DNA of 32,944 nt from Octopus bimaculoides (lineage: Eukaryota): the NCBI RefSeq assembly GCF_001194135.2, contig NC_069008.1, forward strand, positions 6,679,679-6,712,622, written 5' to 3'. The stretch's first letter is position 1. Every line of letters starts with the position of its first letter. Shown in pieces: positions 10,223 to 32,944 of this stretch. The translations under genes were made by a program, and so were the position numbers. The notes beneath the pieces are model-generated. The model saw only the letters and a program-made list of their open reading frames with translations. It searched no databases and was not told the origin of the DNA.

Positions 10223-10974
10223 TTTTCTACTTACCAGTAGAATGTTTGATATGAACTCTGTAGTGACGACTTATTGCAGACGCCATTTTGGAACATTCAT
10301 CTACGCATGCGCATAGGATTAAAGCTTTCGAGAAATCTGNNNNNNNNNNNNNNNNNNNNNNNNNNNNNNNNNNNNNNNNNNNNNNNNNNNNNNNNNNNNN
10401 NNNNNNNNNTCACCATCAGTAGCTAGGCTTCAAACCCATATTGCCTTCGTCAATCTCGGCTGTTGACCAGGCAGGACGTAACTTGGACCAGCTCCTGGGA
10501 GATGGAATACTGATGGCGAGCGATGTCGCGATTCTATGAAAATGCCTTCATAGTTTTGTGTCTAACTAGCAACCCTGCTGCTTTTACAGCAAGGTGTCCT
10601 GGCTACCGATGTCCAGAGATGGAATGTTTATTCGGACAAAATAAATTATTGTTATTTGTCCTCGCTTTTTCCTTCCATGAACTATGTATGGAATTGTGAA
10701 GCACCCAGCAAGTGCTGAATCACATTTTCCTACAAGTCCAAAAGAAAAGTGAAGAAGTGTGAGAAAAGATCATTGATTGATTTGTGGTCGATTAAAAGCC
10801 ATTTCTCGTCCTGTAAAATCCGGAACAAACATTTAGCGATGTGAGGTTGTGATCAAACGAAATATTTAATCCTGAAGGTCATGGAACACTGACCCTTAAA
10901 CATGTATGTTGCCCTGTCTTATCCGTTAACATTCACCTCGACACGAGATAATTACTACGAATCATTATAATTAG
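10223..10974 (-). promoter_or_regulatory. Orphan ZNF 5' cassette (promoter, exon 1, donor GTAAGT at 10234-10229) with no ZNF CDS behind it
   Basis: Reverse complement is highly similar to 31989-32645 (upstream of gene E) and 11666-11937. The sequence switches to Gypsy gag 12 nt into the intron. Confidence 0.75.
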
Positions 10975-11410
10975 CGAGGAATGTGAAGACGCAGGCTGGA
11001 AAGCGGAATATTTTCCACTCGAAGTCGGATGTAGAGGGTTTGTTGGACACTGTGAGACGAGTGTTGTTATCGTTAGGCCTAACTCATCGTAAAGTAAATA
11101 CCACCACGATCGATATCCAAGCCACACTGGAAATGGCTAGCCACTGGATTTGGTTAAAAAGAGACGATTAGCGATGTCTAAAAGAATATTGAGCTGTATT
11201 TAATAACCTGTTGATCTAGCAAGTGGGGCCTCATATCAGTGAGGGGCCGGGGGCGGAGCGCATTCTTTCCTGTTGACCCCATACACTTGCTGGCTTCCGG
11301 TATACGGAGTTCTCGACTGGTAGCCTTTGCATGTGCAAGTTTTTTACAAAATATCTGGACACTTGTACTATCCCACATTTTTAAGGGCATTGTAGTATGT
11401 CTCCTTTGTT
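10975..11410 (+). mobile_element. HERO-clade RLE retrotransposon 3' remnant (with probable 3'UTR)
   Basis: EECEDAGWKAEYFPLEVGCRGF matches the HERO C-terminal PxEVGCRGF motif. It is the inverted paralog of ~15290-15810. Confidence 0.75.
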
Positions 11411-11665
11411 TTTTAAAGACAGAATAATGTAATCTGTTGGAGACTTGGCTGATATTTCTTCAAGGTCGAAAGATCACGCAGAGGCTCGCTCCAGTATACA
11501 TAATTATTATTGTGCTGTGTGATGCTGGATAAAATTAAAAACGTAAATTAACATAACTGAAGGTTTGTTACATTATGTTGGGGATTTTTAATATATGTCA
11601 CCGGTATCGTTTACAAAAGGGGAAAGAACATCACCGACACCGCCTATTGCAAATGTTGAGCTGAT

Positions 11666-12018
11666 CTAATTATAATGATTCGTAGTAATTATCTCGTGTC
11701 AAGGTAAATGTTAATGTATAAGACAGGGCAACATACATGTTTAAGGGTCAGTGTTTCATGACCTTCAGGATTAAATATTTCGTTTGATCACAACCTCACA
11801 TCGCTAAATGTTTGTTCCGGATTTTACAGGACGAGAAATGGCTTTTAATCGACCACAAATCAATCAATGAAATTTTCTCATACTTCTTCACTTTTCTTTT
11901 GGACTTTATATCAAACATTCTACTGGTGAGTAGAAAATATACATTTGCTCCATACATATAAACAGAGGTCTTTGATATCAGAGACAAGGAACTTTTTAAG
12001 AATTCCTCAAGAATTTCT
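11666..12018 (+). promoter_or_regulatory. 5' cassette of ZNF gene A with predicted 5'UTR intron 11926-12000 (GTGAGT...TTTTTAAG)
   Basis: The tcaaacattctactg|gtgagt donor and an AG exactly 18 nt before the ATG are conserved across paralogs. Confidence 0.7.
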
Positions 12019-13272
12019 ATGGAGAACGTTAATCACTCGGACACTTGTAAGACGACTGTTTTTAAGAATGGAGATGCAGTTAGAATGACAGACAGAGATG
12101 AGAAAGCTGAAGACAAAAGTGTTCCTGAATATCACTGTGAGATTTATAGGAAGACATTCTCTTCAGAAGATGAAGTCTTGTCGCACGAAGAAATACACGG
12201 GAAGGAAAAACGGTTCCGTTGTGAAATATGTTGCAAATGTTTTACCACTAATGGTCATTTAAGGACACATAAAAGATTACACACAGGGGAAAAACCCTTC
12301 CACTGTGAAATATGTGGGAAATATTTTACTCGTAGTAGTAGTTTAAAGCAACATAAAAGAGTACATACAGGAGAAAGACCCTTCCACTGTGAAATATGTG
12401 GGGAATCATTTGGTCGTAGTAGTACATTAACAAGACACAAACTTGTACATACCAGGGAAAAACGTTTCCCTTGTGAAATATGTGGGAAATGTTTTGCCAC
12501 TAATACTATTTTAAAGGTACACAAAAGAATACATACAGGAGAAAAACCCTTCCACTGTGAAATATGTGGGAAACGTTTTACCTCTAATAGTAATTTAAAG
12601 ACACATAAAAGAATACACACAGGAGAAAAACCCTTCCACTGTGAAACATGTGGGAAATCATTTGGTTGTAATAGTGCATTAACTAGTCACAGAATTGTAC
12701 ACACTGGGGAAAAACGTTTCCATTGTGAAACATGTGGGAATTGTTTTACCTCTAATAGGGATTTAAAGAGGCATGAAAGAATACATACAGGAGAAAAACC
12801 CTTCCACTGTGAAATATGTGGGAAATGTTTTACCTCTGATAATAATTTAAAGAGACATAAAAGAATACATACAGGAGAAAGACCCTTCCATTGTGAAATA
12901 TGTGGAGAATCATTTCGTTTTAGTAGCACATTAAGAGCACACAAAACTGTACACACTGGGGAAAGACGTTTCCATTGTGAAATATGTGGGAAACGTTTTA
13001 TCAATAATTCTCATTTAAAGCGGCATACAAGAATACATACAGGTGAAAAACCCTTCAATTGTGAAATATGTGGGGAATCATTTGTTTGCAGTGGTACATT
13101 AAGAAAACATGAAGTTGTACACACTGGGGAAAAACGTTTCAATTGTGAAATATGTGGGAAATGTTTTACCTCTAATAGTAGTTTAAAGGGACATAAAAGA
13201 ATACACACAGGAGAAAAAAACCTTTCCACTGTGAAATATGTGAGAAATCATATAGTTCTAGTATTGCATTAA
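12019..13272 (+). CDS. Tandem C2H2 zinc-finger protein (gene A): 12 canonical fingers plus a degenerate N-terminal finger
   Basis: 417-aa ORF with repeated CxxC-x12-HxxxH and TGEKPF linkers. The C-terminus shifts out of frame at an A7 run (13214-13220). Confidence 0.93.
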   Translation: MENVNHSDTCKTTVFKNGDAVRMTDRDEKAEDKSVPEYHCEIYRKTFSSEDEVLSHEEIHGKEKRFRCEICCKCFTTNGHLRTHKRLHTGEKPFHCEICGKYFTRSSSLKQHKRVHTGERPFHCEICGESFGRSSTLTRHKLVHTREKRFPCEICGKCFATNTILKVHKRIHTGEKPFHCEICGKRFTSNSNLKTHKRIHTGEKPFHCETCGKSFGCNSALTSHRIVHTGEKRFHCETCGNCFTSNRDLKRHERIHTGEKPFHCEICGKCFTSDNNLKRHKRIHTGERPFHCEICGESFRFSSTLRAHKTVHTGERRFHCEICGKRFINNSHLKRHTRIHTGEKPFNCEICGESFVCSGTLRKHEVVHTGEKRFNCEICGKCFTSNSSLKGHKRIHTGEKNLSTVKYVRNHIVLVLH

Positions 13273-13344: not shown

Positions 13345-13485
13345 CATCAATATTTAACATCACATTTTCCATGCTGGCATGGGTTGGCCAGTTTGACTTG
13401 AGTTGGCAAACTGGAGAGCTGCACAAGGCTCCAGCTGTTTGTTTTGGCCTGGTTTCTGTGCTTGAATGCCTTTTCTAATGCCAAC
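13345..13485 (-). mobile_element. RTE-tail/SINE copy in the predicted 3'UTR of gene A (antisense)
   Basis: Reverse complement gttggcattagaaaaggcattc...ccaacccatgccagcatggaaaa matches the 1046-1180 tail. Confidence 0.8.
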
Positions 13486-13742
13486 ATGAAATGGTGAAAC
13501 ATGTTAGAAATCATTTTCTCTTCTCTTCTTGTAATCCACAAATACCATCCGGAGAAATTTCTGTTCGCTTTTAATTTTTTGACTGAGACACAATTTCATG
13601 AATCATGATGAGGAAAATGCAAATGAGAGACATTCATCAGTATTTTAACTTCCACATTTTCACACTTGACTGGGTCAGATAGGATTTGTTGAGTCAATCA
13701 CTGTGGTCAGATGCCACTCTTCCAATTAATTACATTCCCAGA

Positions 13743-13883
13743 GTGGTTGGTGTTAGGAAGGGCATCCAGCCAGAGAAACCATGCCAAGTCAGACGGGAGT
13801 GTGGTGCTGCTTCCAGCTTACCAACTCTGGACTAACCGTCCAACCCATGCCAGCATGAACGACAGATTCTAAATGATGATGAT
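13743..13883 (+). mobile_element. RTE-tail/SINE copy in the predicted 3'UTR of gene A (sense)
   Basis: gtggttggtgttaggaagggcatccagcc...ccaacccatgccagcatg...(gat)n. Confidence 0.85.
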
Positions 13884-14227: not shown

Positions 14228-14420
14228 TGCTTTCCAAAATTTCATAAATGTTGTAGATGTGTTTGTATTCAAATTCACCAAAATATACATATGTTTGCAT
14301 ATGGGTACATGATCATAGAGNNNNNNNNNNNNNNNNNNNNNNNNNNNNNNNNNNNNNNNNNNNNNNNNNNNNNNNNNNNNNNNNNNNNNNNNNNNNNNNN
14401 NNNNNNNNNNNNNNNNNNNN

Positions 14421-14515
14421 TCTTCAGCTTTCTCATCTCTGTCTGTCATTCTAACTGCATCTCCATTCTTTAAAACAGTCGTCTTACAAGTGTCCGAGTG
14501 ATTAACATTCTCCAT
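14421..14515 (-). CDS. ZNF paralog B, 5' start only (remainder in or lost at the N gap)
   Basis: MENVNHSDTCKTTVLKNGDAVRMTDRDEKAE is nearly identical to gene A. A 99-nt 5'UTR intron is predicted at 14534-14632 (GTGAGT, CTGAC branch, TTTTTAAG). Confidence 0.7.
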
Positions 14516-15289
14516 ATAAATTCTTCAGGAATTCTTAAAAAGTGGGTAAATTGTCAGTTTCTTGTATTAGATATCACAGATCTCTGTTTAAAGCAGAGGA
14601 GCAAATGTAATGAAGTTATATTTTCTACTCACCAGTAGAATGTTTGANNNNNNNNNNNNNNNNNNNNNNNNNNNNNNNNNNNNNNNNNNNNNNNNNNNNN
14701 NNNNNNNNNNNNNNNNNNNNNNNNNNNNNNNNNNNNNNNNNNNNNNNNNNNNNNNNNNNNNNNNNNNNNNNNNNNNNNNNNNNNNNNNNNNNNNNNNNNN
14801 NNNNNNNNNNNNNNNNNNNNNNNNNNNNNNNNNNNNNNNNNNNNNNNNNNNNNNNNNNNNNNNNNNNNNNNNNNNNNNNNNNNNNNNNNNNNNNNNNNNN
14901 NNNNNNNNNNNNNNNNNNNNNNNNNNNNNCCCCTAAACACGCAGCTTGCCCTGTCCTATCCACAAACATTAAAATTCATCTTCTCACGAGCCAATTACTA
15001 CGAATTAGATCAACTTAGCTTGTGCAATGGACGGTGTCGTTGGTATTCTTTCTCCCTTTGTAAACGATACCGGTGACATGTATTAAAAATCCCCAACGTA
15101 ATGTAACAAACGTTCAATTCTATTAATTTACGTTTTTAATTGTATCCAACATNNNNNNNNNNNNNNNNNNNNNNNNNNNNNNNNNNNNNNNNNNNNNNNN
15201 NNNNNNNNNNNNNNNNNNNNNNNNNNNNNNNNNNNNNNNNNNNNNNNNNNNNNNNNNNNNNNNNNNNNNNNNNNNNNNNNNNNNNNNNG

Positions 15290-16545
15290 GAGACATACTA
15301 CAATGCCCTTAAAAATGTGGGATAGTACAAGTGTCCAGCTGTTTTGCAAACAACACGCACATGCAAAGGCTACCAGTCGAGAACTCCGTATACCGGAAGC
15401 CAGCAANNNNNNNNNNGTCGAGAACTCCGTATACCGGAAGCCAGCAAGTGTATGGGGTCAACAGGAGAGAAAGCGCTCCGTCCCCCACCTAACTGATATG
15501 AGGCCCCACTTGCTAGATGAACGGATTATTGATTACAGCTCAATATTCTTTTACACATCCCTCATCGTCTCTTTTTAACCGAATCCAGTGGCTAGCATTT
15601 TCCACTGTCGTTTGGATATTGATCACGGTGGTATTTACTTTACGATGAGTTAGGCCTAACGTTAACCATATTCGTCTCATACTATGTCCAACAAAATCCT
15701 CTACATCCGACTTCGAGTGGAAAATATTCCGCTTTCCAGCCTGCGTCNNNNNNNNNNTCGAGTGGAAAATATTCCGCTTTCCAGCCTGCGTCTTCACATT
15801 CCTCGCTGAAGTTTACATAGCTGTCAGTCTTTCGAGCCCGAGCGGCGCTCCATGTTATCTTCATAAGGAACCGTTAACTCGACTAGATTCACAACTTTCT
15901 TTCATTCAAACCATATCAAAATGTCCGGTTTTTTTTTTTTTCGTAACTTGGATGGGAAAGAGTCCCTGACACCCTGAAAATTCTGCAGTCACCTTCCACC
16001 ATTCTACTTTTCGTTGCTCACAGGAAGCTTGTTGTTCTTCTTGAAACAGATCTGCTGTCCTGAGCGCACGTAGGTAATGAAATCTCTAGTTGGTAAAGGA
16101 CCAAGTTGNNNNNNNNNNNNNNNNNNNNNNNNNNNNNNNNNNNNNNNNNNNNNNNNNNNNNNNNNNNNNNNNNNNNNNNNNNNNNNNNNNNNNNNNNNNN
16201 NNNNNNNNNNNNNNNNNNNNNNNNNNNNNNNNNNNNNNNNNNNNNNNNNNNNNNNNNNCATAGAATGAACGAATCAGAAAACTTAGCCGAGATGTGGTCC
16301 ACCTCCATCTCTTATTCCGACTTATTTTGTTCTCAACATGTTCCCCCCATTTCGTCATCTGTCCTTGTTGAATACATTGGATCGTTTTCACGCTGTTGCT
16401 AACAACAGATCTGCATTTGTTCTGCATCATTCTTGCAAACGGTTTGAACTTATTTGTGCCAAAACCAAGTCCCTTCCGATGATATTGCGTTGCACCCACC
16501 ATATCTTGATGCGTAAGAGAAGAAAAGATGGGCTTCATTGATTCT
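15290..16545 (-). mobile_element. HERO-clade RLE non-LTR retrotransposon, 5'-truncated and decayed
   Basis: GATQYHRKGLGFG...QQGQMTKW...RLSFLIRSFY; ITYVRSGQ; PDILIWFE*KKVVNLVELTVPYEDNME; PLEVGCRGF. These are HERO-type RLE motifs (PD...ELTVPWE). Confidence 0.8.
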
Positions 16546-17015
16546 TGACTCGCCTCTCTCGGTCAATTCTAGGGATGGGGTATTTAAAAGATATTTCATT
16601 TTAATAGCATACTTTTCTGTTACAANNNNNNNNNNGGGTATTTAAAAGATATTTCATTTTAATAGCATACTTTTCTGTTACAAAATATCTTTACTTACTT
16701 ACACACGGGGCCTCGCAAGATTGAGGTTGGGGTCAAAATTTAAAATGAACGTTGTTTTTTNNNNNNNNNNCTCGCAAGATTGAGGTTGGGGTCAAAATTT
16801 AAAATGAACGTTGTTTTTTGGTTGTGTTACTTCCGCATCATCAGTTCATAAAATGTGTTTAGGGACAAAAATATTGAAAAACAGTGAGTGAAAATGAGGA
16901 AGGTGGTCATCGTATCTGCTAGAAACAGCAGCTAAATCTCCCTTAAATCACAGTTTCCTTTGAGAATATTTAGTTCTTTTTCATTCTTGTATTTTTTTCT
17001 TTTAAAAAAAATGGC

Positions 17016-17044: not shown

Positions 17045-17929
17045 AAAATGGCTCCTTCCGTGGCGTTTTAATCGTAAAAAAAAATTGGCCGTAATCATCC
17101 CGGAGTGCGATAGGGAGGAGGAAGGGTAGAGAAAATAATTCATAAATTTTCAAAACTTTTTTTTCCTGAAAAGACGATCCCCACCACCACCATTTCCAAG
17201 GCTGTGGCGAAAAACAAATGGAAAAATAATTCTCAAAACGGAGAAATTACAGCTTTTGTGGTTCCCCTGTAGGAAGTGAGGCTGTCACTGAATGGGTGCC
17301 ACACAATTCCTTACGTAATCGTGGAAGGAAAATAGCGGAACNNNNNNNNNNCCTTACGTAATCGTGGAAGGAAAATAGCGGAACAAGAATATCTGAACAA
17401 ATAACGATATTTATTTTTCGTCTGTACAAGCGTTACATCTTGGGACAATCAGTAGCNNNNNNNNNNNNNNNNNNNNNNNNNNNNNNNNNNNNNNNNNNNN
17501 NNNNNNNNNNNNNNNNNNNNNNNNNNNNNNNNNNNNNAATTGTGAAGGCATTCTTCACAGGTTAGCCAACAGCGTGTGGCGCCTTCAATATTCCAGCTAC
17601 ACGGAGCTGGTCAAGTTTGTGTGCTGCTCAGGTCGGCAGTAGAGGCGAAGAGGAACGGTGGCAATCAAGCCTAGCGGCCGCTGATGGCTGCCGATGCACA
17701 TGAGGGGCTTCCTGAAGGCTCTAATCCCTGTGCATGTGTGGATGAAAATCCAACAATGGCAACTGGAACCACCCGAGACTACACCTTTATCTGAAACTCC
17801 GTTTTTTTTTAAAAACTCCTCGCCACACCCACTGCGAAATTTTTATTCACACAAATTTCTTTATAATCGTTATGTATGCCATTTGAAAGATGTTTCTGTA
17901 ACCTTTCATGACAACATACCCATTTTTAT

Positions 17930-18875
17930 GTAAGTTACGAGGGAAAAGAGTCGGGTCGTATGAAGAGATAAAACAACTTTGCATTTAATAACGACAGAGA
18001 TAATAACGTGTGTGTGTGTATAACTTTAATAAGCTCCATTGCTTTATAGTTTTGTAAGTATTACGTACTTTACTGAATGAAAGAAAGTTAACAGNNNNNN
18101 NNNNATAGTTTTGTAAGTATTACGTACTTTACTGAATGAAAGAAAGTTAACAGATTCCAATTATATTGGAATTTGTTGTGAAAAACATTTTCAGTAAGTC
18201 GAGAGACCAGTTTCCAAAAACTCAAANNNNNNNNNNGTGAAAAACATTTTCAGTAAGTCGAGAGACCAGTTTCCAAAAACTCAAACGATTCCGTTTTGAT
18301 GGGAGCGATAAAAGGTTTTCACAACAAATTCAGATATATGTGGAATTTACACCATTACAAGGATATCTGTGGAAAATTTTTATCTAAAAATACCCATTTT
18401 CCCTCCATTTATTAAGAAAGAAATTCGGTTGGGCACTCTTATGTAGGTATGCCATGTGTTTCTTAAAGGCATAGGGTGAAAGACACGGCATGTGAAGTGC
18501 TAAAAATAGGGGCCAACACACCACCAATTCGTCCAACACCATTCCGTTTTCAGAAAATAAATGCAGTTATCTGCGGAATGGTCAAATTAATTGACGTGAC
18601 ATAAAAAACCTGAAATATTATCGATTTTATTTAGTGTTTTCAGCGGTCAACGTACAATCAAACAATCTTTGCTTCTTATAAGGGTAGACATGAAGTATTC
18701 CTTATTTTTCACAGGACAGAACAAAGTCGATTCCTTAATTAATCTTAAACTTAGCTAATTTACCTTATGTTGCGTTTACAATTTACTTTCATCNNNNNNN
18801 NNNTTAAACTTAGCTAATTTACCTTATGTTGCGTTTACAATTTACTTTCATCCTTGACTAATTGTTTTCATTGAC
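17930..18875 (+). repeat. Non-coding block, direct paralog of 26075-27389 (holds the empty site of the 26239 MITE)
   Basis: Colinear similarity from gagggaaaagagtcgggtcg to gttttcattgact; single CAGATTCC at 18151-18158. Confidence 0.85.
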
Positions 18876-22944: not shown

Positions 22945-24285
22945 CTAACAGTGAACAGATCTTTTATGACACTTCAATTTACTTGAAGATACATAAGATT
23001 TCTCACAAATTTCACACTGGAATGGTTTCTCTCCTGTGTGATAACGTTTGTGCTCAATTAAATGAGAATTCTGGATGAAAGATTTTCCACATATTTCACA
23101 ATGGAATGGTTTCTCTCCTGTGTGTGTTCTTACATGTCTGCTTAAAACTGCTTTAGAGGCAAAACATTTCCCACAAATTTCACAGTGGAAAGGTTTTTCC
23201 CCAGTGTGTATTCTTCTGTGTTTTGTTAATGTACCACTACAACCAAACTGTTTTTCACATATTTCACATTGGAATGGTTTCTCTCCAGTATGTATTCTTT
23301 TGTGTCTTTTTAGGACGTAAATAGTAACAAAATATTTCTCACATATTTCACATTGAAATGCTTTTTCTTCTGTGTGACATCGTTTGTGCTCAAATAGATG
23401 AGAATTCTGACCGAAAGATTTTCCACAAATTTCACAGTGGAAAAGTTTTACTCCAGTATGTATTCTTTCATGTCTCTTTAAGTCACCATTAGTTGGAAAA
23501 CATTTCCCACATATTTGACAAGGGAAAGGTTTTTCCCCTGTGTGTATTCTTTTATGCCTTGATAAGATGCTACAAGAACCAAAAGACTTCTCACATATTT
23601 TGCAATGGAAACGTTTTTCCCCAGTGTGTACACTTTTGTGTGTGGTTAATGCACTACTAGAACCAAATAATTTCCCACATATTTCACATCTAAATGGTTT
23701 TTCTCCAGTGTGAATTCTTATGTGTCTTCTTAGTGAGGTACTGGAAACAAATGATTTCTCACATATTTCACATTGGAATGGTTTTTCTCCCCTGTGTATT
23801 TTCATGTGTATCTTTAAATTTCCATTTGTGAAGTAAGATTTCTCACACATTTTGCACTGGAATGGTCTTTCTCCTGTGTGATAACGTTTGTGAACCACAA
23901 GATAAGCATTATCATGAAATGATTTCCCACATATTTCACAGTGAAAAGCTTTCTCACCAGTGTGTAGCCTGTGGTGTGTTTTTAAATCGTGTTTGTAAAC
24001 AAAAGATTTCCAACATATTTTACACTGGAATGGTTTCTCCCCAGTGTGACTACGTTTGTGAACTACAAGCTGAGATTTACGAAGAAATGATTTCCCACAT
24101 ATTTCACAACGGAACCGTTTTTCCTTCTTGTGTATTTCTTCGTGCGACAAGTCTTCATCCTCTGAAGAGAATGTCTTCTTACAAATCTCACGGCGATATT
24201 CAGGAACATTTTTGTCTTCAGTTTTCTCATCTCCATTCTTACAAACAATTACGTTACAAGTGTCCAAGTGATCAACGTTCTCCAT
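22945..24285 (-). CDS. Tandem C2H2 zinc-finger protein (gene C): 14 fingers (last HX4H) plus a degenerate N-terminal finger
   Basis: Uninterrupted 446-aa ORF with TGEKPF linkers. A 118-nt 5'UTR intron is predicted at 24304-24421, with AG 18 nt before the ATG. Confidence 0.95.
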   Translation of the reverse strand: MENVDHLDTCNVIVCKNGDEKTEDKNVPEYRREICKKTFSSEDEDLSHEEIHKKEKRFRCEICGKSFLRKSQLVVHKRSHTGEKPFQCKICWKSFVYKHDLKTHHRLHTGEKAFHCEICGKSFHDNAYLVVHKRYHTGERPFQCKMCEKSYFTNGNLKIHMKIHRGEKPFQCEICEKSFVSSTSLRRHIRIHTGEKPFRCEICGKLFGSSSALTTHKSVHTGEKRFHCKICEKSFGSCSILSRHKRIHTGEKPFPCQICGKCFPTNGDLKRHERIHTGVKLFHCEICGKSFGQNSHLFEHKRCHTEEKAFQCEICEKYFVTIYVLKRHKRIHTGEKPFQCEICEKQFGCSGTLTKHRRIHTGEKPFHCEICGKCFASKAVLSRHVRTHTGEKPFHCEICGKSFIQNSHLIEHKRYHTGEKPFQCEICEKSYVSSSKLKCHKRSVHC

Positions 24286-24289
24286 ATTA

Positions 24290-25735
24290 ATTCTTCAGCA
24301 ATTCTTTAAAAAATGGAGAAATATCTGAGTTAACGTATTATGTTTCACTTTCTTGTCTTAAATATCACAGACCTCTGTTTACATGTGTGGAACAAGTGTA
24401 CCGAACATATTTTCTACTCACCAGTAGAATATTTGATATACAGTGCAGATGAAAAGTGTAGAACGTCGTTAATTGATCTGTTGTTGTTTAAAAGCCATTT
24501 CCTCTCCTGTAAAATAGGAAACAACCAATTAACTTTGTAAAGCTGAAATATTTAATCATAAAGGTGATGGAACACCGACCCGCAAACCTGTAGGTCGCCC
24601 TGTCTTATCCACAAACATTAACGTTCTTCTTAACATGAGATAATTATTACATATGATATAATTAGATCGGTTCAACTAATTAGAAACACGCACTGTAGGC
24701 ATCGTTATTGATATGTAACCGGTGACATATATTTAGAGTCGCCAACATAATACAACAGAAACGGCTTCAATTATATTAATTTTCGTCTTTAGTTGTATCC
24801 AACATCACTCAAAACAATAATTATGGTAAATCTGGTGAAGTATCAAAATTTACCATAACTATTACGTACAAGGGAGAAAGTCATTTGTTTATATATGACT
24901 CAATAAGCTGTCAAACATAAATTGATGGAAAGACGGGGCTCTATTTTTATTTCATTCTATTACATTTTTTGTGGATTATTTGTTTAAAATTAACAATAAG
25001 CCAAAACAGCGTATTGAGAAAAGTTGTATAATTAGGATTGCATTGTAGACTGTCGCCTTTCTTTTCTTAAGACACAACGGTGTGATTTGAAAGAGACTTG
25101 GCTGCTATTTCCAGAAGATCGAAAGACCTTACACAGACTCTCTCCTTTGTACATAATAGTTACTGTTAAGCCCTATTTTAAAGACTTAAATTAATATAAT
25201 TGAAGCTGTTTCTGTTGTATTATGTTGGCGACTCTAAATATATGTCACCGGTTATATGTCAACAACGATGGCCTACAGTGCGTGTTTCTAATTAGTTGAA
25301 CCGATCTAATTATATCATATGTAATAATTATCTCATGTTAAGAAGAACGTTAATATTTGAGGATAAGACAGGGCAACCCACAGGTTTGAGGGTTGGTGTT
25401 CCATCACCTTTATGATTAAATATTTCGTTTCATCATAGCTTTACATCGTTAATTGGTTGTTCCCTATTTTACTGGACAGGGTAAATAGCATTTAATCAAA
25501 AAGAAATCAATCAACGAACTTTCCTCAGCCTTCTCCACTTTACATTTGAACCATATATCAAACATTCTACTGGTGAGTAGAAAATATATCTACATTGCAT
25601 CTGTTCCACACATGTAAACAGAGATCTGTGATATTTAAGTCAAGAAACTGAACGATAATAGATTAACGCAGAAACATTTGTCAGCTTTTTAAGAATCGCG
25701 TAAGAATTAATATGAAGCACAGTGATCACTTGGAC
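24290..25735. repeat. Inverted duplication of the ZNF 5' cassette (arms ~24290-24785 and ~25190-25735)
   Basis: For example, 24630-24780 is nearly the exact reverse complement of 25192-25345; spacer ~400 bp. Confidence 0.85.
25085..25140 (+). repeat. Short dispersed repeat (ttggctgctatttctagcaggtcga-like); other copies near 5708, 11444, 16905(-), 30860(-)
   Basis: Recurring ~35-50 bp motif, probably a SINE fragment. Confidence 0.5.
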
Positions 25736-25836
25736 ATTTCTAACGCAATCATTTTTAAATGTACAGATACAGTTAAACAAACTAATCGAGAAAGCTGAAG
25801 AGAATGTTCCTGAATATCGCTGTGAGATTTGTTTCC
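25545..25836 (+). pseudogene. ZNF 5' stub 1 (donor, intron, ATG 25712, frameshifted leader, ends at EYRCEIC)
   Basis: MKHSDHLDISNAIIFKCTDTV is homologous to the ZNF leader; premature stop. Confidence 0.75.
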
Positions 25837-26075
25837 TTAGCCTTCTTCACTTTACATTTGAACTAAATATCAAACATTCTATTGGTGAGTAGGAAATGTA
25901 TCTACATTGCATCTGTTCCACACATGTAAACAGGACTGTGATAGCTAAGACAAGAAACTGAACCATAATAGATTAACGCAGAGACATATCTTAGTTAATA
26001 AAGAATTTTTAAAAAATTAATATGGAGAACGCCGATCACTTGAACACTTGTAACATACTCATTTTCTTGAAAGAT
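25837..26075 (+). pseudogene. ZNF 5' stub 2 (ATG 26022, truncated after ~17 codons)
   Basis: MENADHLNTCNILIFL, then an abrupt switch to the 26075 block. Confidence 0.7.
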
Positions 26076-26238
26076 ATGAGGGAAAAGAGTCGGGTCGTGT
26101 AAAAACGAAAAAAAACAAAAAAAACTTTGCTCTTTATAACGACAAAGATAATAACGTGTGTGTATAACAGTAATATGCTCTGTTGCTTTATATTACTGTA
26201 AGTATTATTTACTTTACGAAAGAAAGTTGACAGATTCC

Positions 26239-26805
26239 GGATCTTTTTTAAAACGGGGGCCACATTTTTCATTAACGAAACACTTTGAAACGTGGAACAC
26301 TGGTAGAATGTGTCATATAAAACATCTTTTTCTCTTAGTCTTCTTAAAAAAAAAACGAAATCCATAAATTATTCCATGTTAAAGTTGTCGTATTTCTGTA
26401 ATTTCAACCAATCACTGACGTCCATTCAGCCGATATACATTAAGTGCCGACTACATAAACAAACGATTCTGAAACAATTAACCCTAACCCTAACCCTAAC
26501 TCTAACCCTAAGCCTAACGTTAGGGTTAGGGTTAAAGCAAATTTAAAATGAAAAAAGCAAATAAAACGAAGAATCGTTTGTTTATGTAGTCGGCACTTAA
26601 TGTATATCGGCTGAATGGACGTTAGTGATTGGTTGAAATTATCGAAATAAGACAATTTTTTACATGAAATAAATTCGAATACAAAAATATTTTTCTGTTC
26701 TATAACACAAAATAGATAAGTATACGAAGTTTGAAAGTCTTTCGGTACCAAAAACACTACGTAAAACATTAATGAAAAATGTGCCCCCCGTTTTAAAAAA
26801 GATCC
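26239..26805. mobile_element. 567-bp non-autonomous foldback DNA transposon (37-bp TIRs starting GGATCT, 8-bp TSD CAGATTCC; possibly Merlin-like)
   Basis: TIRs match at 36/37; TSD at 26231-26238 and 26806-26813; empty site at 18151-18158; inner 72-bp arms match at 71/72. The superfamily assignment is inference only. Confidence 0.9.
26478..26535. repeat. (TAACCC)n followed by (TTAGGG)n telomere-type repeats inside the MITE loop
   Basis: ttaaccctaaccctaaccctaactctaaccctaagcctaacgttagggttagggttaa. Confidence 0.9.
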
Positions 26806-27389
26806 CAGATTCCAATTATATTGGAATTTGTTGTGAAAAACGTTTTCGGCAAGTCGAGAGACCAGTCTCAGAAAATTCAAACGATTCCGTTTTCATAATA
26901 GATTCGATATATGTGAAATTTACACCATTACAAGGATATCTGTAGAAAATTTTATTTAAAAATAGCCATTTTCCCTACAGTTGGAAAGAAATTCGATGGG
27001 GCACTTTTGTGTAGGTATGTCATGTGTGTAAAAAGTATAAGGTCAAAATACACAGCAAGCGAAGTGCTAGAAATAGGGGCCAACACACCATCAATTCACC
27101 AACCACCATTTCCTTTTCAGAAAATAGATGCACAGTTATCTGCAGAATGATCAAAGTAATTCATGTGACAGAAAAAAAAAAAAAACCTGAAATATTATCG
27201 ATTTTATTTAGTGTTTTCAGTGGTCAATGTACAATCAAAAAAACTTTGCTATTTATAAGGGTAGAGAAGAAATATTACTTATTTTACAGGACAAAACAAT
27301 GTCGATTCCTTACTTAATTTAAAATTGGCTAATTCAACTTATGTTGCATTACAATTTACTTTCATCCTTGTCTAATTGTTTTCATTGAC

Positions 27390-27785
27390 TTACCTCATAT
27401 GAATGAGAACAGTTGCATCAACGGTGCTAATCTCTAATTGTAGAGGCACCATGTGGAAGGGGTAGACCCAGGAAGACGTAGCGCAATGTGATCAGAAAGG
27501 ATTTAAAACTCTTGGTGGTTTGTTCTGCTTGAAAAGACACATCAAACGAAGGAAAAATGTGGTGGCCCTTGCAACCCTCTCCTGCTAAGCATCCCTCATC
27601 TTACATGTTCGTAGGTGCTACTGCCATGTAAAAAGTCCCCACTACAATCTGTAAATTGGTTGGTATTAGGAAGGGCATCCGGTCATACAAACCATGCCAA
27701 GACAGACAGGGAGCCTGGGCAGCTCCTTTCAAACCATCCAACCAATGTCAGCAGGCAAAATGGATGTGAACTGATGATGATGAGT
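27390..27785 (+). mobile_element. RTE LINE 3' end and tail
   Basis: atgaatgagaacagttgcatc...catgtggaaggggtagacccaggaagac (CGRGRPRKT remnant), ttaggaagggcatcc core, (gat)n tail. Confidence 0.75.
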
Positions 27786-28804
27786 TAAAAGAATAGAGAA
27801 TATGGAGACTGGTACATCCTCAAGTTTTATTTCCTTTTCTTTGACCATGTCATACAGCATATTTCTATGGTTACCATGACCAACACCTAGTACTGCTAAT
27901 ATAGACTCCAGAAAATATTACCATCCAGCAAAGCAAACACAGAACAACAGCATAATTGACAACTCCTTGTAGTTATAGATATTTAATACTAATCCGTGTG
28001 GTTAGNNNNNNNNNNNNNNNNNNNNNNNNNNNNNNNNNNNNNNNNNNNNNNNNNNNNNNNNNNNNNNNNNNNNNNNNNNNNNNNNNNNNNNNNNNNNNNN
28101 NNNNNNNNNNNNNNNNNNNNNNNNNNNNNNNNNNNNNNNNNNNNNNNNNNNNNNNNNNNNNNNNNNNNNNNNNNNNNNNNNNNNNNNNNNNNNNNNNNNN
28201 NNNNNNNNNNNNNNNNNNNNNNNNNNNNNNNNNNNNNNNNNNNNNNNNNNNNNNNNNNNNNNNNNNNNNNNNNNNNNNNNNNNNNNNNNNNNNNNNNNNN
28301 NNNNNNNNNNNNNNNNNNNNNNNNNNNNNNNNNNNNNNNNNNNNNNNNNNNNNNNNNNNNNNNNNNNNNNNNNNNNNNNNNNNNNNNNNNNNNNNNNNNN
28401 NNNNNNNNNNNNNNNNNNNNNNNNNNNNNNNNNNNNNNNNNNNNNNNNNNNNNNNNNNNNNNNNNNNNNNNNNNNNNNNNNNNNNNNNNNNNNNNNNNNN
28501 NNNNNNNNNNNNNNNNNNNNNNNNNNNNNNNNNNNNNNNNNNNNNNNNNNNNNNNNNNNNNNNNNNNNNNNNNNNNNNNNNNNNNNNNNNNNNNNNNNNN
28601 NNNNNNNNNNNNNNNNNNNNNNNNNNNNNNNNNNNNNNNNNNNNNNNNNNNNNNNNNNNNNNNNNNNNNNNNNNNNNGTTGAACCTATACCAATCAGATG
28701 CTGGCTGGGTATTCTAAGATCATGTACCCACGTGCAAACATATGTATATTTTGGTGAATTTCAATACAAACACATGTACAACAATTATGAAATTTTGAAA
28801 ATCA

Positions 28805-28810: not shown

Positions 28811-29289
28811 GTAGAAAATAACAAAATGTAGAATAACAAGTGAATCATTGACTACAAAATATGGAACATATTAAAAGTAATCAATCCTTTATAATATTTG
28901 GGGAGTGAAAAATATTATTTAGTTTTTGTTTTGTTATTTTGACATTTTCATTTAAATCCTCATACACAAATTAGCATCTATAATTATGTACATATTTCAA
29001 TAATGCCTCTATCTTTATTGATGGCTAGTTATTACACAAACCCACAACAGTAAGTCCACCCAAAGAAATGTAAGATGTGACAGAAAGAAACTGAAGGAAG
29101 CCCATCGCATATGTGTGTCTGTTTGACTTGATATAGCATGGTAGTTGTGTCACCAATATACAAGAAGTGGCCTCCATTAAAATAACAGCAACCAGGAGCA
29201 TCTGTTGTCCATTGGAAATATCTTTCTCCAGTGTGTTTTCCTGGTGCTACTATATCATTTAGAATCTGTTGTCCATGGTGGCATGCGGT

Positions 29290-29390
29290 GCACAGTTTGG
29301 ACTAGGATGGTAAGCTGGAAGCAGCACCACACCCCTGTCTGACTTGGCATGGTTTCTCTGGCTGGATGCCCTTCCTAACACCAACCACTC
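29290..29390 (-). mobile_element. RTE-tail/SINE copy in the gene D 3' region (ortholog of 13743-13883)
   Basis: ggcatggtttctctggctggatgcccttcctaacaccaaccac. Confidence 0.8.
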
Positions 29391-29626
29391 TGGGAGTGTA
29401 ATTAATTGGGAAGAGTGGCTTCTGACCACAGAGATTGATTCAACAAATCCTGTCTGATCCAGTCAAGTGTGAAAATGTGGAAATTAAAATATTGATGAAT
29501 GTCTCTCTTTTGTATTTTCCTCATCATGATTCATGAAATTGTGTCTCAGTCTGAAAAATAACAGTGAACAGATCTATCTCCGGATGGTATTTGTGGATTA
29601 CAAGAAAGGAAGAGAAATTTCTAACA

Positions 29627-29757
29627 TGGCATTAGGAAGGGCATGCAGCCATAGAAACAAGGTCAAAACAGACAACTGGAGCAGCTCTCCGGCTTGCCAG
29701 CTCAAGTCAAACCGTCCAACCCATGCCAGCATGGAAAATATGATGTTGAATATTGAT
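29627..29757 (+). mobile_element. RTE-tail/SINE copy in the gene D 3' region (ortholog of 13345-13485)
   Basis: tggcattaggaagggcatgcagcc...ccaacccatgccagcatggaaaa. Confidence 0.8.
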
Positions 29758-29809
29758 CACAGTCATAAATTGTTCCCCAAAGAAAAGAAAGAAAAGGGTT
29801 TATCATATC

Positions 29810-30770
29810 TTACAGCTAAAAGGTTTCCCTCCAGAATGAATCCTTTTCTCATTCATTGATTCACTACAAGACTCAAAAGATTTTTCGCAGTGGGATGGTA
29901 TTTCCTCCTGTGTGACAACATTTGTGGTCAAGCAGACGACCACTCTGAGTAAAAAGTTTTCCAGTGGAAAGATCATTCTCCAGGATGTACTCTTTCCCAA
30001 GTTCTCAGGGTAATACTACAAAAGAATACCCACATATTTCACATTGGAATGGTTTCTCTCCAGTGACTTCGTTTATGAACTACAACCTCAAATTTATGGA
30101 AAAATGCTTTCCCACATATTTCACAATTACCGTTTTCTTCTAGAGTGTATTTTTTGTGGCGTGCATAACTAGATTGCTGAGGGAATACTTTCCCACATAT
30201 TTCACAGTGGAAGGGTTTTTCTCCTGTATGTATTCTTTTATGTCCCTTTAAAGCACTATTCTGGGTAAAACAATTACCACATATTTCACAGTGGAAGGGT
30301 TTTTCTCCTGTATGTATTCTTTTATGTCGCTTTAAAGCACTATTATGGGTAAAACAATTACCACATATTTCACAGTGGAAGGGTTTTTCTCCTGTATGTA
30401 TTCTTGTATGTCCCTTTAAATCACTATTATAGGTAAAACATTTCCCACATATTTCACAAGGGAAACGTTTTTCTGCAGCGTGTACAGCTTTGTGTCGTGT
30501 TAATGTACTACAAGAACCAAATGATTCCCCACATATTTCACAATGGAAACGTTTTTCCCCGGTGTGTACAGTTTTGTGTCTTGCTAATGTACTACTAAAA
30601 ACAAATGGTTTTCCACATATTTCACAGTGGAAGGGATTTTCTCCTGTATGTATGCCTTTATGTGCCTTTAAATGACTATTAGTGGAAAAACCTTTCCCAC
30701 ATATTTCACAATTGAAACGTTTTTCCACGGTGTGTACAGTTTTGTGTGCTGTTAATTTACCACTACAACT
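29810..30770 (-). pseudogene. ZNF gene D: 5'-truncated finger array (7 intact, 1 degenerate and 1 partial finger) with a frameshifted, decayed tail
   Basis: The ORF 30039-30893 is ZNF-like only from ~30770 downward. A 2-nt deletion in the last HTGEKP linker gives HWRETIPM*, and degenerate fingers continue to ~29810. No leader or ATG homolog is present. Confidence 0.8.
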
Positions 30771-31988
30771 ATAAGCAGAAACGATGTGGGCTTGAAAAAA
30801 CAAATAAATATTTAAATGATTTTTATACATGCGAAAGTTAGAAATAAAGAGGAGGGTGGTCTTGTGATGTGCTAGAAATAACAGCCAAATCATCCTTAAA
30901 TCAAAGTTCTACCGCTGAAAATATTTGAAATTTTTGTTTTAGTACCGAAACGACTCCTTCCATAGTTTTTAGGTGCCAAAAAAGAAAAGAAAAAAAGAGA
31001 AAGAAATTGCGAAAAACCGTCGTGAGGGGCATGGTGGGGATGGTGAAAAAAATAAACTTATATGGTCTTTATTTGAAACTCCGTATTTTCTAAACTCCTG
31101 TCCCCGCCTATTCGGAGAACATTTCATCCACATATTTTTTTACAACCGTAATGCATGCAGTCTGAATGATAATTCTATAAACTTTCATTTAAAAAAAATT
31201 CTTGAACGTTATCAGGGAAAAAATGGGGTGGTGTGAATTTTGTGAAACTGCTCTCCGAGCCCCCTAAGAATAATTCTTTCCCATAAATCCTCATATACTC
31301 TGAATGTACAGCATCTAAGGCAGATTTGTTGAAAATTTCGTGAAAATGTATCGATTTTTCTGGAAGTTATGCGGCGACGGAGGACACAACTGTGGTGAAA
31401 CGAGAAAACCTTCTGTCGATCCCATTGAAGCAGAATCGTCTGAATTTTCCGAAACTTCACTCTCCACTTGCGGAAAATGTCATTCACAACCAATTCCGAT
31501 ACAATCGGAATAAATCAACAGTCTTGTGTCCATTAAAATAACTAAGTCCTATTTAAGTAATACTTGTCATAATATGTAGTAATAAAGCTTATTACAGTTT
31601 CTCTCTCTCTCTGTCACACACACGTTAATATCTCTGTCCTTAAAAAAGCAAAGCTTGCTTGTAGGTTGCCCCACTGAAAACAGTAAATGAAATTCATAAT
31701 AGTTCAGATCTTCCGCATCATTTCAATTAATTCCGATAAGTTTATTTATTTTCCGAGAAACTAATGAGGATGGACGAGTCGGTGGTGTAGTCTCATATTT
31801 CTAGCAGTTCGCGTATTGTGTATTTGATACTATGCTTTTTATACACTCAGGGCATACCTACAAAACAGCGCCCCACCGAATGTGTTTGTTCGTAACTTTA
31901 TGGAAAATGGGTATTTTTAAATAAAACTTTCTACAAATATGCTTCTGNNNNNNNNNNNNNNNNNNNNNNNNNNNNNNNNNNNNNNNNT

Positions 31989-32752
31989 CTAATTATAATG
32001 ATTCGTAGTAATTATCTCGTGTGAAGGTAAATGTTAATGGATAAGACAGGGCAACATACATGTTTAAGGGTCAGTGTTCCATGACCTTCAGGATTAAATA
32101 TTTCGTTTGATCACAACCTCACATCGCTAAATGTTTGTTCCGGATTTTACAGGACGAGAAATGGCTTTTAATCGACCACAAATCAATCAATGAAATTTTC
32201 TCATACTTCTTCGCTTTTCTTTTGAACTAGTAGGAAAATGTGATTCAGCACTTGCAGGGTGCTTCACAATTCCATACATAGTTCATGGAAGGAAAAAGCG
32301 AGGACAAATAACAATAATTTATTTTGTCCGAATAAACATTCCATCTCTGGACATCGGTAGCCAGGACACCTTGCTGTAAAAGCAGCAGGGTTGCTAGTTA
32401 GACATAAAAATACGAAGGCATTTTCAGGCTACGACGTCGTTCGCCATCAGAATTGGCATTCTGCTTGGTCAACTGGCCGGGTTGAAGAGAAGGGAATTGC
32501 AGTGAAGCTGGCTGCTGCTGATGATTTCGCATGCGCATAAGTGTTTTCCATTAGATCTTCAGAAAGCTCTAATCCTATGCGTGGATTATGTTCCAAATTG
32601 GCGTCAGTACAAAGTTCACATCAAACATTCTACTGTTAAGCAGAAAATATAACTTCATTACATTTGCTCCATACATATAAACAGAGGTCTTTGATATCAA
32701 AGACAAGGAACTGACAATTTACCCACTTTTTAAGAATTCCTCAAGAATTTCT
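31989..32752 (+). promoter_or_regulatory. 5' cassette of ZNF gene E (99-nt intron equivalent 32636-32734; donor G changed to T)
   Basis: Homologous to 11666-12018 plus a ~390-bp extra segment; CTGAC at 32711 and AG at 32733-32734. Confidence 0.7.
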
Positions 32753-32944
32753 ATGGAGAACGTTAATCACTCGGACACTTGTAAGACGACTGTTTTTAAG
32801 AATGGAGATGCAGTTAGAATGACAGACAGAGATGAGAAAGCTGAAGACAAAAGTGTTCCTGAATATCACTGTGAGATTTATAGGAAGACATTCTCTTCAG
32901 AAGATGAAGTCTTGTCGCAGAAAGAAATACACGAGAAGGAAAAA
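32753..32944 (+). CDS. ZNF paralog E, 5' part (runs off the window)
   Basis: MENVNHSDTCKTTVFKNGDAVRMTDRDEKAEDKSVPEYHCEIYRKTFSSEDEVLSQKEIHEKEK; 189/192 nt identical to the start of gene A. Confidence 0.85.
   Translation, partial: MENVNHSDTCKTTVFKNGDAVRMTDRDEKAEDKSVPEYHCEIYRKTFSSEDEVLSQKEIHEKEK

What the first reader, a model, noticed from the sequence alone, without database searches (positions are those of the whole stretch)
10223..32944. ZNF cluster built from one cassette repeatedly duplicated as head-to-head palindromes
Seen: at least seven copies of the same 5' cassette (10223-, 11666+, 14421-, 24285-, 25190+, 25837+, 31989+). Two pairs are true inverted repeats: 10735-10974 with 11666-11905, and ~24290-24785 with ~25190-25735. 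D/E are also divergent and A/B convergent. In both palindromic pairs one arm leads an intact gene and the other a dead stub or a TE. Established: coleoid C2H2 genes are massively expanded in clusters. Inference: fold-back/inverted duplication seeded at the promoter may drive birth-and-death of these genes, possibly with bidirectional promoters and arm-to-arm conversion.
Basis: partly seen in the sequence, partly recalled or inferred. Interest (0 to 1): 0.75.

Follow-up and report, generated by a model that had tools for sequence, protein, structure and literature searches.

The report
Octopus zinc-finger genes with inverted 5' stubs
A small Octopus bimaculoides zinc-finger gene cluster really does hold seven copies of one gene 5' end, two pairs of them head-to-head, but this is ordinary mixed-orientation duplication and decay in a gappy short-read assembly, not evidence for a special palindrome-making mechanism.

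Summary
All seven 5' cassette copies sit at the stated places. Both inverted repeats are real: 10734-10974 with 11666-11906 (97%, 691-nt spacer), and about 24181-24890 with 25130-25832 (81% overall).

The window is O. bimaculoides chromosome CM046628.1, which is Hi-C scaffolding of the 2015 short-read assembly.

Cassette anatomy:
- a TE-derived upstream stretch;
- a 96-nt untranslated exon (11830-11925, conserved GT donor);
- a short intron;
- a MENV... leader in front of the C2H2 array.

State of the copies:
- Two lead intact genes (417 and 446 aa).
- Three are dead stubs.
- Two run straight into assembly gaps.
- A third finger array has lost its head.

- Pair 2 arms are each other's closest relatives in the window. 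Their inner ~260 bp are 95% identical against 82% further out, which fits arm-to-arm homogenisation.
- In pair 1 the stub's closest relative is a copy 21 kb away, which shares a 391-bp insertion with it, not its partner. Its junction also abuts a 65-bp exact repeat where assembly paths could be swapped.
- Orientation along the seven copies (2 head-to-head, 1 tail-to-tail, 3 same-strand) is what chance gives.

Inverted gene/pseudogene duplicates are well known elsewhere, for example in mouse Mup. Interest is low to moderate.

The parts
10223..10974 (-). Copy A, a dead 5' stub that forms the left arm of pair 1. It consists of X' (10735-10974), a ~480-nt insert region (10253-10734, including the 70-N gap), and the exon end with a GTAAGT donor (10223-10252).
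   Evidence: A is 96.7% identical to B over X. It is about 97% identical to G over the first ~440 nt, including the insert. Homology stops 12 nt into the intron.
7832..9743 (-). Decayed LTR-type retroelement fragment downstream of stub A: a CCHC gag-like ORF followed by RT and RNase H.
   Evidence: PF17917 at 1.6e-18, PF17919, weak RVT_1. ORFs listed. No LTR pair was found.
10975..11665 (+). Spacer of pair 1, which is the upstream stretch U of gene 1. Positions 10975 to about 11170 are the decayed 3' tail of a TE ORF (..EVGCRGF.., ..WIWLKRDD*).
   Evidence: translations; colinear with 15807->15009 of copy C; copy C continues further upstream, so the A|U junction at 10974/10975 lies inside TE sequence, with 2-bp 'AG' microhomology.
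11666..11925 (+). Copy B cassette core and right arm of pair 1: X (11666-11905) plus the exon end. The inferred 96-nt untranslated exon is 11830-11925 (acceptor TTTTACAG|, donor CTACTG|GTGAGT).
   Evidence: the related protein model P0122 reads through 11835-11924, ends at the donor, and resumes at 11977-12054.
12019..13272 (+). Gene 1 CDS, 417 aa: MENV leader, one degenerate finger and 12 C2H2 fingers. A 13th finger is out of frame at 13230. The conserved 3' flank runs to 14319.
   Evidence: The exact protein is on record in GCA_001194135.2. Homology of the 3' flank to genes 2 and 3 is.
14421..15807 (-). Copy C: U, part of X, the exon end, and the leader to codon 31. It is broken over six small contigs and its body lies in, or is lost at, the 100-N gap 14321-14420.
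   Evidence: Every contig end of C that lies within its stretch of homology to B carries exactly 50 bp identical to B.
22945..24285 (-). Gene 2 CDS, 446 aa, 14 C2H2 fingers.
24286..24890 (-). Copy D cassette, the left arm of pair 2. Its upstream homology ends near 24883-24890.
24891..25129 (.). Spacer of pair 2 (~240 nt). Its right part, 25040-25129, is homologous to gene 1's U (11387 onward), so it belongs to E's side.
25130..25831 (+). Copy E, a dead stub and the right arm of pair 2. The exon acceptor AG is mutated to TG, and the leader has a stop at codon 29.
25832..26065 (+). Copy F, a partial direct tandem duplicate of E 25520-25755 (84%), with a stop at codon 27.
30039..30893 (-). Gene 3, a headless C2H2 array. 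It is a 284-aa ORF with 7 fingers matching the strict CX2CX12HX3-4H pattern, and it starts in the middle of a finger. It has no X, exon or leader. Its 3' flank is homologous to that of gene 1.
   Evidence: The exact protein is on record.
31988..32944 (+). Copy G: X, the 391-nt insert (32229-32619), the exon end with its donor mutated GT->TT, the intron, and the leader intact for 64 codons. It is bounded by gaps on both sides.

Best explanation
This is a small, young, lineage-specific C2H2 zinc-finger gene cluster of Octopus bimaculoides. It grows and decays by DNA-level segmental duplication in mixed orientation.

**The duplicated unit** is about 3.4 kb and has five parts:
- a TE-derived upstream stretch;
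- a 96-nt untranslated exon;
- a short intron;
- a single coding exon (MENV leader plus finger array);
- about 1 kb of 3' flank.

**Two independent rearrangements** each placed a second copy of the 5' end in inverted orientation a few hundred bases upstream of a gene.
- The older one produced D/E.
- The younger one produced A/B, with A copied from a G-like unit and not from B.

**Later decay.**
- The redundant heads decayed into stubs through stops, a lost splice site, truncation, a direct partial re-duplication (F) and a neighbouring retroelement.
- One array (gene 3) lost its head.
- In pair 2 the arm segments next to the centre were later homogenised, most simply by gene conversion between the inverted arms.

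**Shown:** the anatomy, the clades, the identity step and the ORF states.

**Inferred:** the order of events, conversion as the cause of the identity step, and the exon assignment, which rests on a related gene model and conserved splice signals.
For: - **Copies and arms:**
- **Locus and assembly provenance:**, and PMC9068888 section 14.
- **C2H2 arrays and retroelement:**
- **DNA-level duplication:** the intron and about 1 kb of 3' flank are kept in genes 1, 2 and 3, and there is no poly-A tail.
- **Two separate clades, so two events:** K2P is 0.02-0.04 within A/B/G, 0.12-0.22 within D/E/F, and about 0.25 between the clades. A, B and G share a 6-bp deletion.
- **A is closest to G:** they share the 391-bp insert and a derived donor +3 A.
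- **Identity step in pair 2:**
- **Stub ORF states:**
- **Exon support:**
- **Arms are not assembly fold-backs:** they differ at 8 of 240 sites and by a 391-bp indel. Pair 2 lies inside the gap-free stretch 19076-28005.
- **Base rates:** 20-40% of linked young animal duplicates are inverted, with head-to-head roughly equal to tail-to-tail (PMC3194840).
Against: - Only one short-read assembly was available. No orthologous or long-read locus could be fetched.
- A, B and G share exact runs of 114-195 bp, longer than the assembler's k of about 51. Paths may therefore switch between paralogs, which makes the small mismatch counts fragile.
- The A|U junction abuts a 65-bp exact node shared with copy C.
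- C and G end in gaps.
- The identity step in pair 2 could instead be a second, younger partial duplication.
- The change point was chosen after looking at the data.
- Sisterhood was tested only among copies in this window, not genome-wide.
Confidence: 0.6

Rival explanations
1. Fold-back (hairpin-primed or template-switch) inverted duplication, seeded recurrently at the promoter, is a systematic driver of birth and death in these genes, with bidirectional promoters and arm-to-arm conversion.
For: - There are two independent head-to-head pairs with short single-copy spacers (691 nt and about 240 nt), and each spacer is contiguous with one arm.
- The pair 1 junction has 2-bp microhomology.
- Pair 2 has an inner identity step compatible with conversion.
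Against: - In pair 1 the arms are not sisters (A is closest to G).
- In pair 2 neither arm is a subset of the other.
- No short inverted seed lies at the pair 1 junction, by my inspection of the bases flanking 10975 and 11665.
- Neighbour orientation matches random expectation.
- A head-to-tail tandem pair exists in the same subfamily (P0122).
- The junctions lie in TE-derived upstream sequence, and the true transcription start is unknown.
- The sample is one window.
Confidence: 0.12
2. Ordinary direct tandem duplication came first, followed by small inversions or deletions (non-allelic recombination between inverted paralogs or TEs) that flipped heads relative to bodies.
For: - There are heads without bodies (A, E, F) and a body without a head (gene 3).
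- A and G are about 95% identical inverted repeats flanking a 21-kb segment, a substrate for inversion.
- The locus is dense in TEs.
- F is a direct tandem duplicate.
Against: - No second breakpoint with matching partner sequence could be identified in the window.
- A published survey argues that most inverted duplicates arise inverted and not by later inversion (PMC3194840).
Confidence: 0.15
3. The adjacency in pair 1, and the tail-to-tail neighbourhood of B and C, is an assembly or scaffolding error of the short-read assembly. The copies exist, but their neighbours or orientation are wrong.
For: - The A|U junction sits at the edge of a 65-bp exact repeat (10973-11037) shared with copy C. That repeat has two possible left neighbours.
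- Copy C is six tiny contigs, and each end within the B-homologous stretch carries 50 bp identical to B.
- A, B and G share exact runs of 114-195 bp.
- The assembly is Hi-C scaffolding on top of 2015 shotgun contigs.
Against: - The junction lies inside an uninterrupted contig (10410-14320).
- The arms are clearly different sequences (8 of 240 mismatches plus the 391-bp insert), so this is not a fold-back artefact.
- If the left neighbours were swapped, an inverted X copy would still lie upstream of a U-X-gene unit.
- Pair 2 is not affected. It lies in a gap-free 8.9-kb stretch, its arms are 19% diverged, and its longest exact inverted run is 84 bp.
Confidence: 0.15

Closest known systems
Mouse major urinary protein (Mup) central cluster: inverted-duplication cassettes, each holding a gene and a divergently oriented pseudogene (PMC2441477; Bishop et al. 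1985 and Clark et al. 1984, as cited there)
   Same: - Gene and pseudogene sit head-to-head as an imperfect palindrome.
- The cluster is fast-evolving and lineage-specific.
- Retroelements lie at the breakpoints.
- Paralogs are homogenised.
   Different: - In Mup the whole inverted cassette (~45 kb in the papers cited there, ~80 kb in PMC2441477) is itself the unit that is repeated in tandem at about 98% identity.
- Here the two pairs arose separately, in different clades.
- The arms here are only 0.27-0.7 kb.
- The partner is a short 5' stub, not a full pseudogene.
Sex-chromosome ampliconic palindromes maintained by arm-to-arm gene conversion (e.g. PMC6790999)
   Same: Inverted arms separated by a short unique spacer. 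In pair 2 a stretch next to the spacer is much more alike than the age of the rest of the arm predicts.
   Different: - The scale here is hundreds of bases, not tens of kb to Mb.
- Only the inner ~260 bp look homogenised.
- The outer arm is 18% diverged.
- One arm is dead.
Fold-back or DSB-induced inverted duplications (PMC10622511) and template-switch inverted duplications (from my own knowledge: ODIRA, Brewer 2011; DUP-TRP/INV-DUP, Carvalho 2011)
   Same: An inverted copy sits close to its source with a short single-copy spacer, and the joint has little or no homology (2 bp 'AG' at 10973-10974).
   Different: - No seeding short inverted repeat was found.
- In pair 1 the inverted copy derives from a different paralog than its neighbour.
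- There is no triplicated segment.
Mammalian KRAB-ZNF clusters that expand by local segmental duplication (my own knowledge) and cephalopod C2H2 expansions (PMC9068888, PMC12513265)
   Same: - Poly-C2H2 genes with a family-specific N-terminal leader.
- Clustered paralogs interleaved with TEs.
- Birth-and-death evolution with pseudogenes.
- Finger-array remodelling; the gene 1 array has a 252-bp super-repeat of three fingers.
   Different: - There is no KRAB or SCAN domain.
- The leader is an octopus-specific MENV... peptide with a degenerate finger.
- The cephalopod papers read here do not describe gene orientation or inverted duplicates for C2H2 genes.

Membership tests
Clustered poly-C2H2 zinc-finger genes (cephalopod expansion) | Tandem C2H2 fingers with TGEKP-type linkers in one long exon | tested here: met
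   Pfam zf-C2H2 and zf-H2C2_2 at E = 1e-39 to 1e-107 for genes 1, 2 and 3. A regex scan finds 12(+1), 14 and 7 fingers. The arrays have an 84-bp period.
Clustered poly-C2H2 zinc-finger genes (cephalopod expansion) | Lineage-specific paralogs that share the N-terminal leader | tested here: met
   The 62-aa leader finds five full-length-leader relatives. Those with an organism name on record are O. bimaculoides or O. sinensis ZNF proteins. There are three arrays and seven heads in 22 kb.
One-step inverted (fold-back type) duplication | Two reverse-complementary arms with a short single-copy spacer | tested here: met
   pair 1 has 241-nt arms at 97% with a 691-nt spacer. Pair 2 has arms of about 0.66-0.7 kb with a spacer of about 240 nt.
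One-step inverted (fold-back type) duplication | The arms are each other's closest relatives | tested here: inconclusive
   Pair 2 meets this within the window (D-E K2P 0.12 in X, against about 0.25 to the others). Pair 1 does not. A shares the 391-bp insert and a derived donor base with G, and B-G (5/240) is smaller than A-B (8/240). Genome-wide relatives could not be searched.
One-step inverted (fold-back type) duplication | The copy is a contiguous subset of its source, with a short inverted seed or microhomology at the joint | tested here: not met
   In pair 2, D lacks the distal upstream stretch and E lacks the body, so neither is a subset of the other. In pair 1, A is a subset of a G-like unit, not of B. 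The joint has only 2-bp 'AG' microhomology and no inverted seed.
Palindrome with arm-to-arm gene conversion | Arm identity is higher than the age of the duplication predicts, without long-term constraint | tested here: inconclusive
   D-E mismatches are 14/258 in the inner part and 64/355 in the outer part. D-B is 22% and E-B 23% in the inner part, so that segment is not slow-evolving. A younger second duplication would give the same pattern. Orthologous arms are needed to decide.
Bidirectional promoter pair | Two divergent transcription starts less than 1 kb apart, both active | not testable with these tools
   No transcript or CAGE data were available. The divergent partners A and E are dead stubs. 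The transcription start may lie upstream of the 96-nt exon, because that exon has a conserved acceptor.
Assembly fold-back artefact | Arms identical, with the joint at a contig end or gap | tested here: not met
   The arms differ (8/240 plus a 391-bp indel in pair 1; 19% in pair 2). Both joints lie inside uninterrupted sequence. A mis-pairing of neighbours at the 65-bp node next to the pair 1 joint remains possible.
Mup-like array of inverted-duplication cassettes | The head-to-head pair itself is the unit repeated in tandem | tested here: not met
   Stub arms A and E are not sisters, and gene arms B and D are not sisters. The clades are (A,B,G) and (D,E,F). The pairs therefore formed separately.

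The most novel reading that the evidence does not exclude
In octopus C2H2 clusters, short inverted duplication of the gene's 5' end, placed a few hundred bases upstream of a paralog, is a recurrent and non-random event. Conversion between the arms then keeps the shared upstream region alike. On this reading, divergent head-to-head promoter modules would be a regular step in making and killing these genes.
Probability: 0.1. Interest if true: 0.5.

Novelty: new member of a known kind. Interest (0 to 1): 0.27.

Why it matters
Cephalopod C2H2 genes are among the largest transcription-factor expansions known, yet how new copies arise at the DNA level has hardly been described. The cephalopod papers read here do not mention gene orientation for C2H2 genes.

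This locus gives one concrete, dated example. It shows a ~3.4-kb DNA-level duplication unit with a TE-derived upstream end, two independent inverted 5' duplicates, rapid decay of the spare heads, and a local identity step that looks like conversion.

It is a useful worked case and a caution about short-read assemblies in such clusters. It is not a new principle, because inverted gene/pseudogene duplicates and palindrome conversion are established in other gene families.

Tried and rejected
- **Cross-species or long-read validation through protein look-ups failed.**
  - The 103-aa leader query found only one generic hit.
  - The full gene 1 query was swamped by vertebrate ZNFs.
  - A profile of seven leaders found nothing.
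  - Gene 2's product is not on record.
  - No O. sinensis or second O. bimaculoides locus could therefore be fetched. L001 and L002 are the same assembly.
- **Retrocopy origin rejected.** The intron and 3' flank are retained and there is no poly-A tail.
- **X as a tRNA-derived SINE or a known RNA rejected.** There were no tRNA or Rfam hits.
- **Inverted arms as terminal inverted repeats of a DNA transposon rejected.** X sits in a fixed position and orientation in front of the leader in five other copies.
- **A simply inserted into the TE stretch rejected.** The sequence left of A (<=10222) does not continue the TE seen upstream of copy C.
- **TE identification incomplete.** Pfam did not identify the TE whose ORF tail forms U.
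- **Albertin et al. 2015 could not be read**.

Full report
**Provenance**

The 417-aa protein of the ORF at 12019-13272 is on record only in GCA_001194135.2, chromosome CM046628.1, of Octopus bimaculoides. L001 and L002 are stretches of the same record. That assembly is Hi-C scaffolding of the 2015 shotgun assembly (PMC9068888 section 14). Local order and orientation therefore rest on short reads. The window holds 18 runs of N.

**Gaps**

All eight 10-N gaps are flanked by exact overlaps of 31-49 bp. They are unmerged contig overlaps, so the sequence there is continuous.

| Gap | Finding |
|---|---|
| 10340-10409 | Flanks colinear with paralog G |
| 14648-14929 | Flanks colinear with paralog B (163 bp in B against 282 N) |
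| 15153-15288 | Flanks colinear with paralog B (117 bp against 136 N) |
| 14321-14420 | Real break: gene 1's 3' flank on one side, codon 31 of a minus-strand leader on the other |
| 31948-31987 | Copy G starts immediately after it |
| 32945-34720 | 1776 N directly after the window end |

**The observation**

They also confirm both inverted repeats.
- Pair 1: 10734-10974 with 11666-11906, 241 nt, 97%, 691 nt apart.
- Pair 2: 24181-24791 with 25832-25179, 81% over 658 columns, with inner blocks at 93-96%.

**Anatomy of the unit**

Taking gene 1 as reference, the unit runs as follows.
- **10975-11665 (U)** is the upstream stretch. Its first ~200 nt are the decayed tail of a TE ORF. Pfam gave no name for it.
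- **11666-11905 (X)** is followed by the exon end.
- **11830-11925** behaves as a 96-nt untranslated exon.
  - Its acceptor is TTTTACAG| and its donor CTACTG|GTGAGT.
  - The donor is conserved in B, C, D, E and F (F has one exonic substitution, CTATTG). It is GTAAGT in A and mutated to TT in G.
  - A related protein model (P0122) reads through exactly this stretch. It stops at the donor and resumes about 40 nt before the ATG.
- **From 12019** the coding exon carries a MENV... leader with a degenerate finger, then the C2H2 array.
- **About 1 kb of 3' flank** is shared by genes 1, 2 and 3, with an AATAAA signal and no poly-A tail.

Duplication is therefore at the DNA level, with a unit of about 3.4 kb.

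Relatives of the leader with an organism name on record are O. bimaculoides and O. sinensis ZNF proteins.

**State of the copies**

| Copy | State |
|---|---|
| B | Intact ORF, 417 aa |
| D | Intact ORF, 446 aa |
| G | Leader intact for 64 codons, then a gap. Its exon is split by a 391-nt insert and its donor is mutated |
| C | 31 codons, then a gap |
| A | Ends 12 nt into the intron; followed by an RT/RNase H retroelement fragment |
| E | Acceptor mutated, stop at codon 29 |
| F | Direct partial copy of E, stop at codon 27 |
| Gene 3 (30893-30039) | Array that starts in mid-finger, with no head |

Only three arrays exist in the 40.9 kb that could be read.

**Relationships**

- A, B and G are 2-4% apart in X. 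They share a 6-bp deletion relative to C, D and E.
- D, E and F form a second clade. The two clades are about 25% apart.
- The two head-to-head pairs are therefore independent events, unlike the Mup array, where the pair itself is the repeated unit (PMC2441477).

In pair 2 the arms are each other's closest relatives in the window.

In pair 1 they are not.
- A shares the 391-nt insert and a derived donor +3 A with G, which lies 21 kb away and is inverted relative to A.
- B is nearer to G (5/240) than to A (8/240).
- A versus G is about 97% over the first ~440 nt. It falls to 60-78% in the distal insert and is high again at the exon end. I cannot explain that mosaic.

**Junctions**

- In pair 1 the spacer is B's own upstream stretch. 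Copy C continues further into the TE at the equivalent point. The A|U joint at 10974/10975 is therefore a breakpoint inside TE sequence, with 2-bp microhomology.
- In pair 2 the spacer (about 24891-25129) carries E's upstream homology to gene 1 (25040 onward), while D's upstream homology stops near 24883-24890.
- D thus lacks distal upstream sequence and E lacks a body. At least two events are needed to explain pair 2.

**Identity step in pair 2**

| Comparison | Inner part (D 24810-24536 / E 25180-25445) | Outer part |
|---|---|---|
| D-E | 14/258 mismatches (5.4%) | 64/355 (18%) |
| D-B | 22% | 16% |
| E-B | 23% | 22% |

The Fisher test gives p = 2e-6, with the change point chosen post hoc. 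The inner segment is not slow-evolving over the long term. A single-age duplication with uniform rates is therefore rejected. Homogenisation between the arms, or a second younger partial duplication, is needed.

**Assembly caveats**

- Within its stretch of homology to B, every contig end of copy C carries exactly 50 bp identical to B, the k-1 signature of a de Bruijn graph.
- The pair 1 joint abuts a 65-bp exact node (10973-11037) shared with C. Which left neighbour belongs to B and which to C rests on read pairs I cannot see.
- A, B and G share exact runs of 114-195 bp, so small mismatch counts among them may be affected by path switches.
- Pair 2 is free of these problems. It lies in a gap-free stretch of 8.9 kb, and its longest exact inverted run is 84 bp.

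**How unusual is it?**

The orientation series - + - - + + + gives 2 head-to-head, 1 tail-to-tail (across a gap) and 3 same-strand neighbours. Random orientation predicts 1.5, 1.5 and 3. In animal genomes 20-40% of linked young duplicates are inverted, with head-to-head about as common as tail-to-tail (PMC3194840). P0122 fuses two nearly identical head-to-tail copies of a sister gene, so direct tandem duplication also occurs in this subfamily. The cephalopod C2H2 papers read here do not discuss orientation.

**Verdict**

- The sequence observation is right.
- The cluster is real but small and half hidden in gaps.
- The two head-to-head pairs are real sequences and separate events.
- One pair shows a conversion-like pattern.
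- The claim of a promoter-seeded fold-back mechanism driving the family is not supported by the one test available here for pair 1, and it is untestable genome-wide with these tools.

This is a new example of a known kind of structure.

Noticed in passing
window 15407-15416, 15748-15757, 16626-16635, 16761-16770, 17342-17351, 18095-18104, 18227-18236, 18794-18803: Every 10-N gap is flanked by an exact duplicate of 31-49 bp. The neighbouring contigs overlap and were joined with N instead of merged. Each such gap therefore adds a false short duplication plus 10 N to the record.
   Followed up: yes
window 32229-32619 (G) and 10253-10734 (A): A 391-nt insert lies inside the 96-nt untranslated exon, only in copies A and G. 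It carries GCGCATGCG and AAAATGGCG motifs, which look to me like NRF1 and YY1 sites (my reading, untested). A and G are about 97% alike in its proximal half and only 60-78% alike in its distal half. Its origin and that mosaic pattern are unexplained.
   Followed up: partly
window 12204-13248: The finger array of gene 1 has a 252-bp (three-finger) super-repeat at 80-85% identity on top of the 84-bp finger period, which points to recent intragenic duplication of finger triplets. A 13th finger at 13230 is out of frame, so the ORF ends early. This is either a real frameshift or a sequence error.
   Followed up: no
window 26239-26805: A fold-back-like element with terminal 37-nt inverted repeats (26239-26275 / 26769-26805, 97%) and a self-complementary core (26366-26675, 78%). 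It is inserted in a ~2-kb repeat that also occurs at 17913-19735.
   Followed up: no
window 1046-1222, 13350-13869, 21602-21913, 27615-27785, 29262-29462, 29530-29856: A short interspersed repeat recurs on both strands. Its translation reads ..WLALGRASS.RN.AKSD... It also lies in the conserved 3' flanks of genes 1 and 3. It looks SINE-like, but no tRNA or Rfam match was found.
   Followed up: partly
window 30846-30926 and 16893-16971: An ~80-nt piece related to the upstream stretch U (about 11428-11500 in gene 1, and 25081-25128 in E) lies directly upstream of the headless gene 3, and again 1.1 kb upstream of copy C. It is either a remnant of an internal deletion in gene 3 or a small independent repeat.
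   Followed up: partly
window 2647-3108 (+) and 10975-11170 (+) / 15873-15685 (-): These are tails of TE ORFs of one type (..K..KY..L....G......VG.RG..). Pfam gave no hit, so the TE family was not identified.
   Followed up: no
protein P0122 (UniParc UPI00071E07E3): This gene model fuses two nearly identical head-to-tail ZNF genes of the same leader family. It splices from the first gene's array into the 96-nt exon of the second, and is probably a read-through or model chimera.
   Followed up: partly
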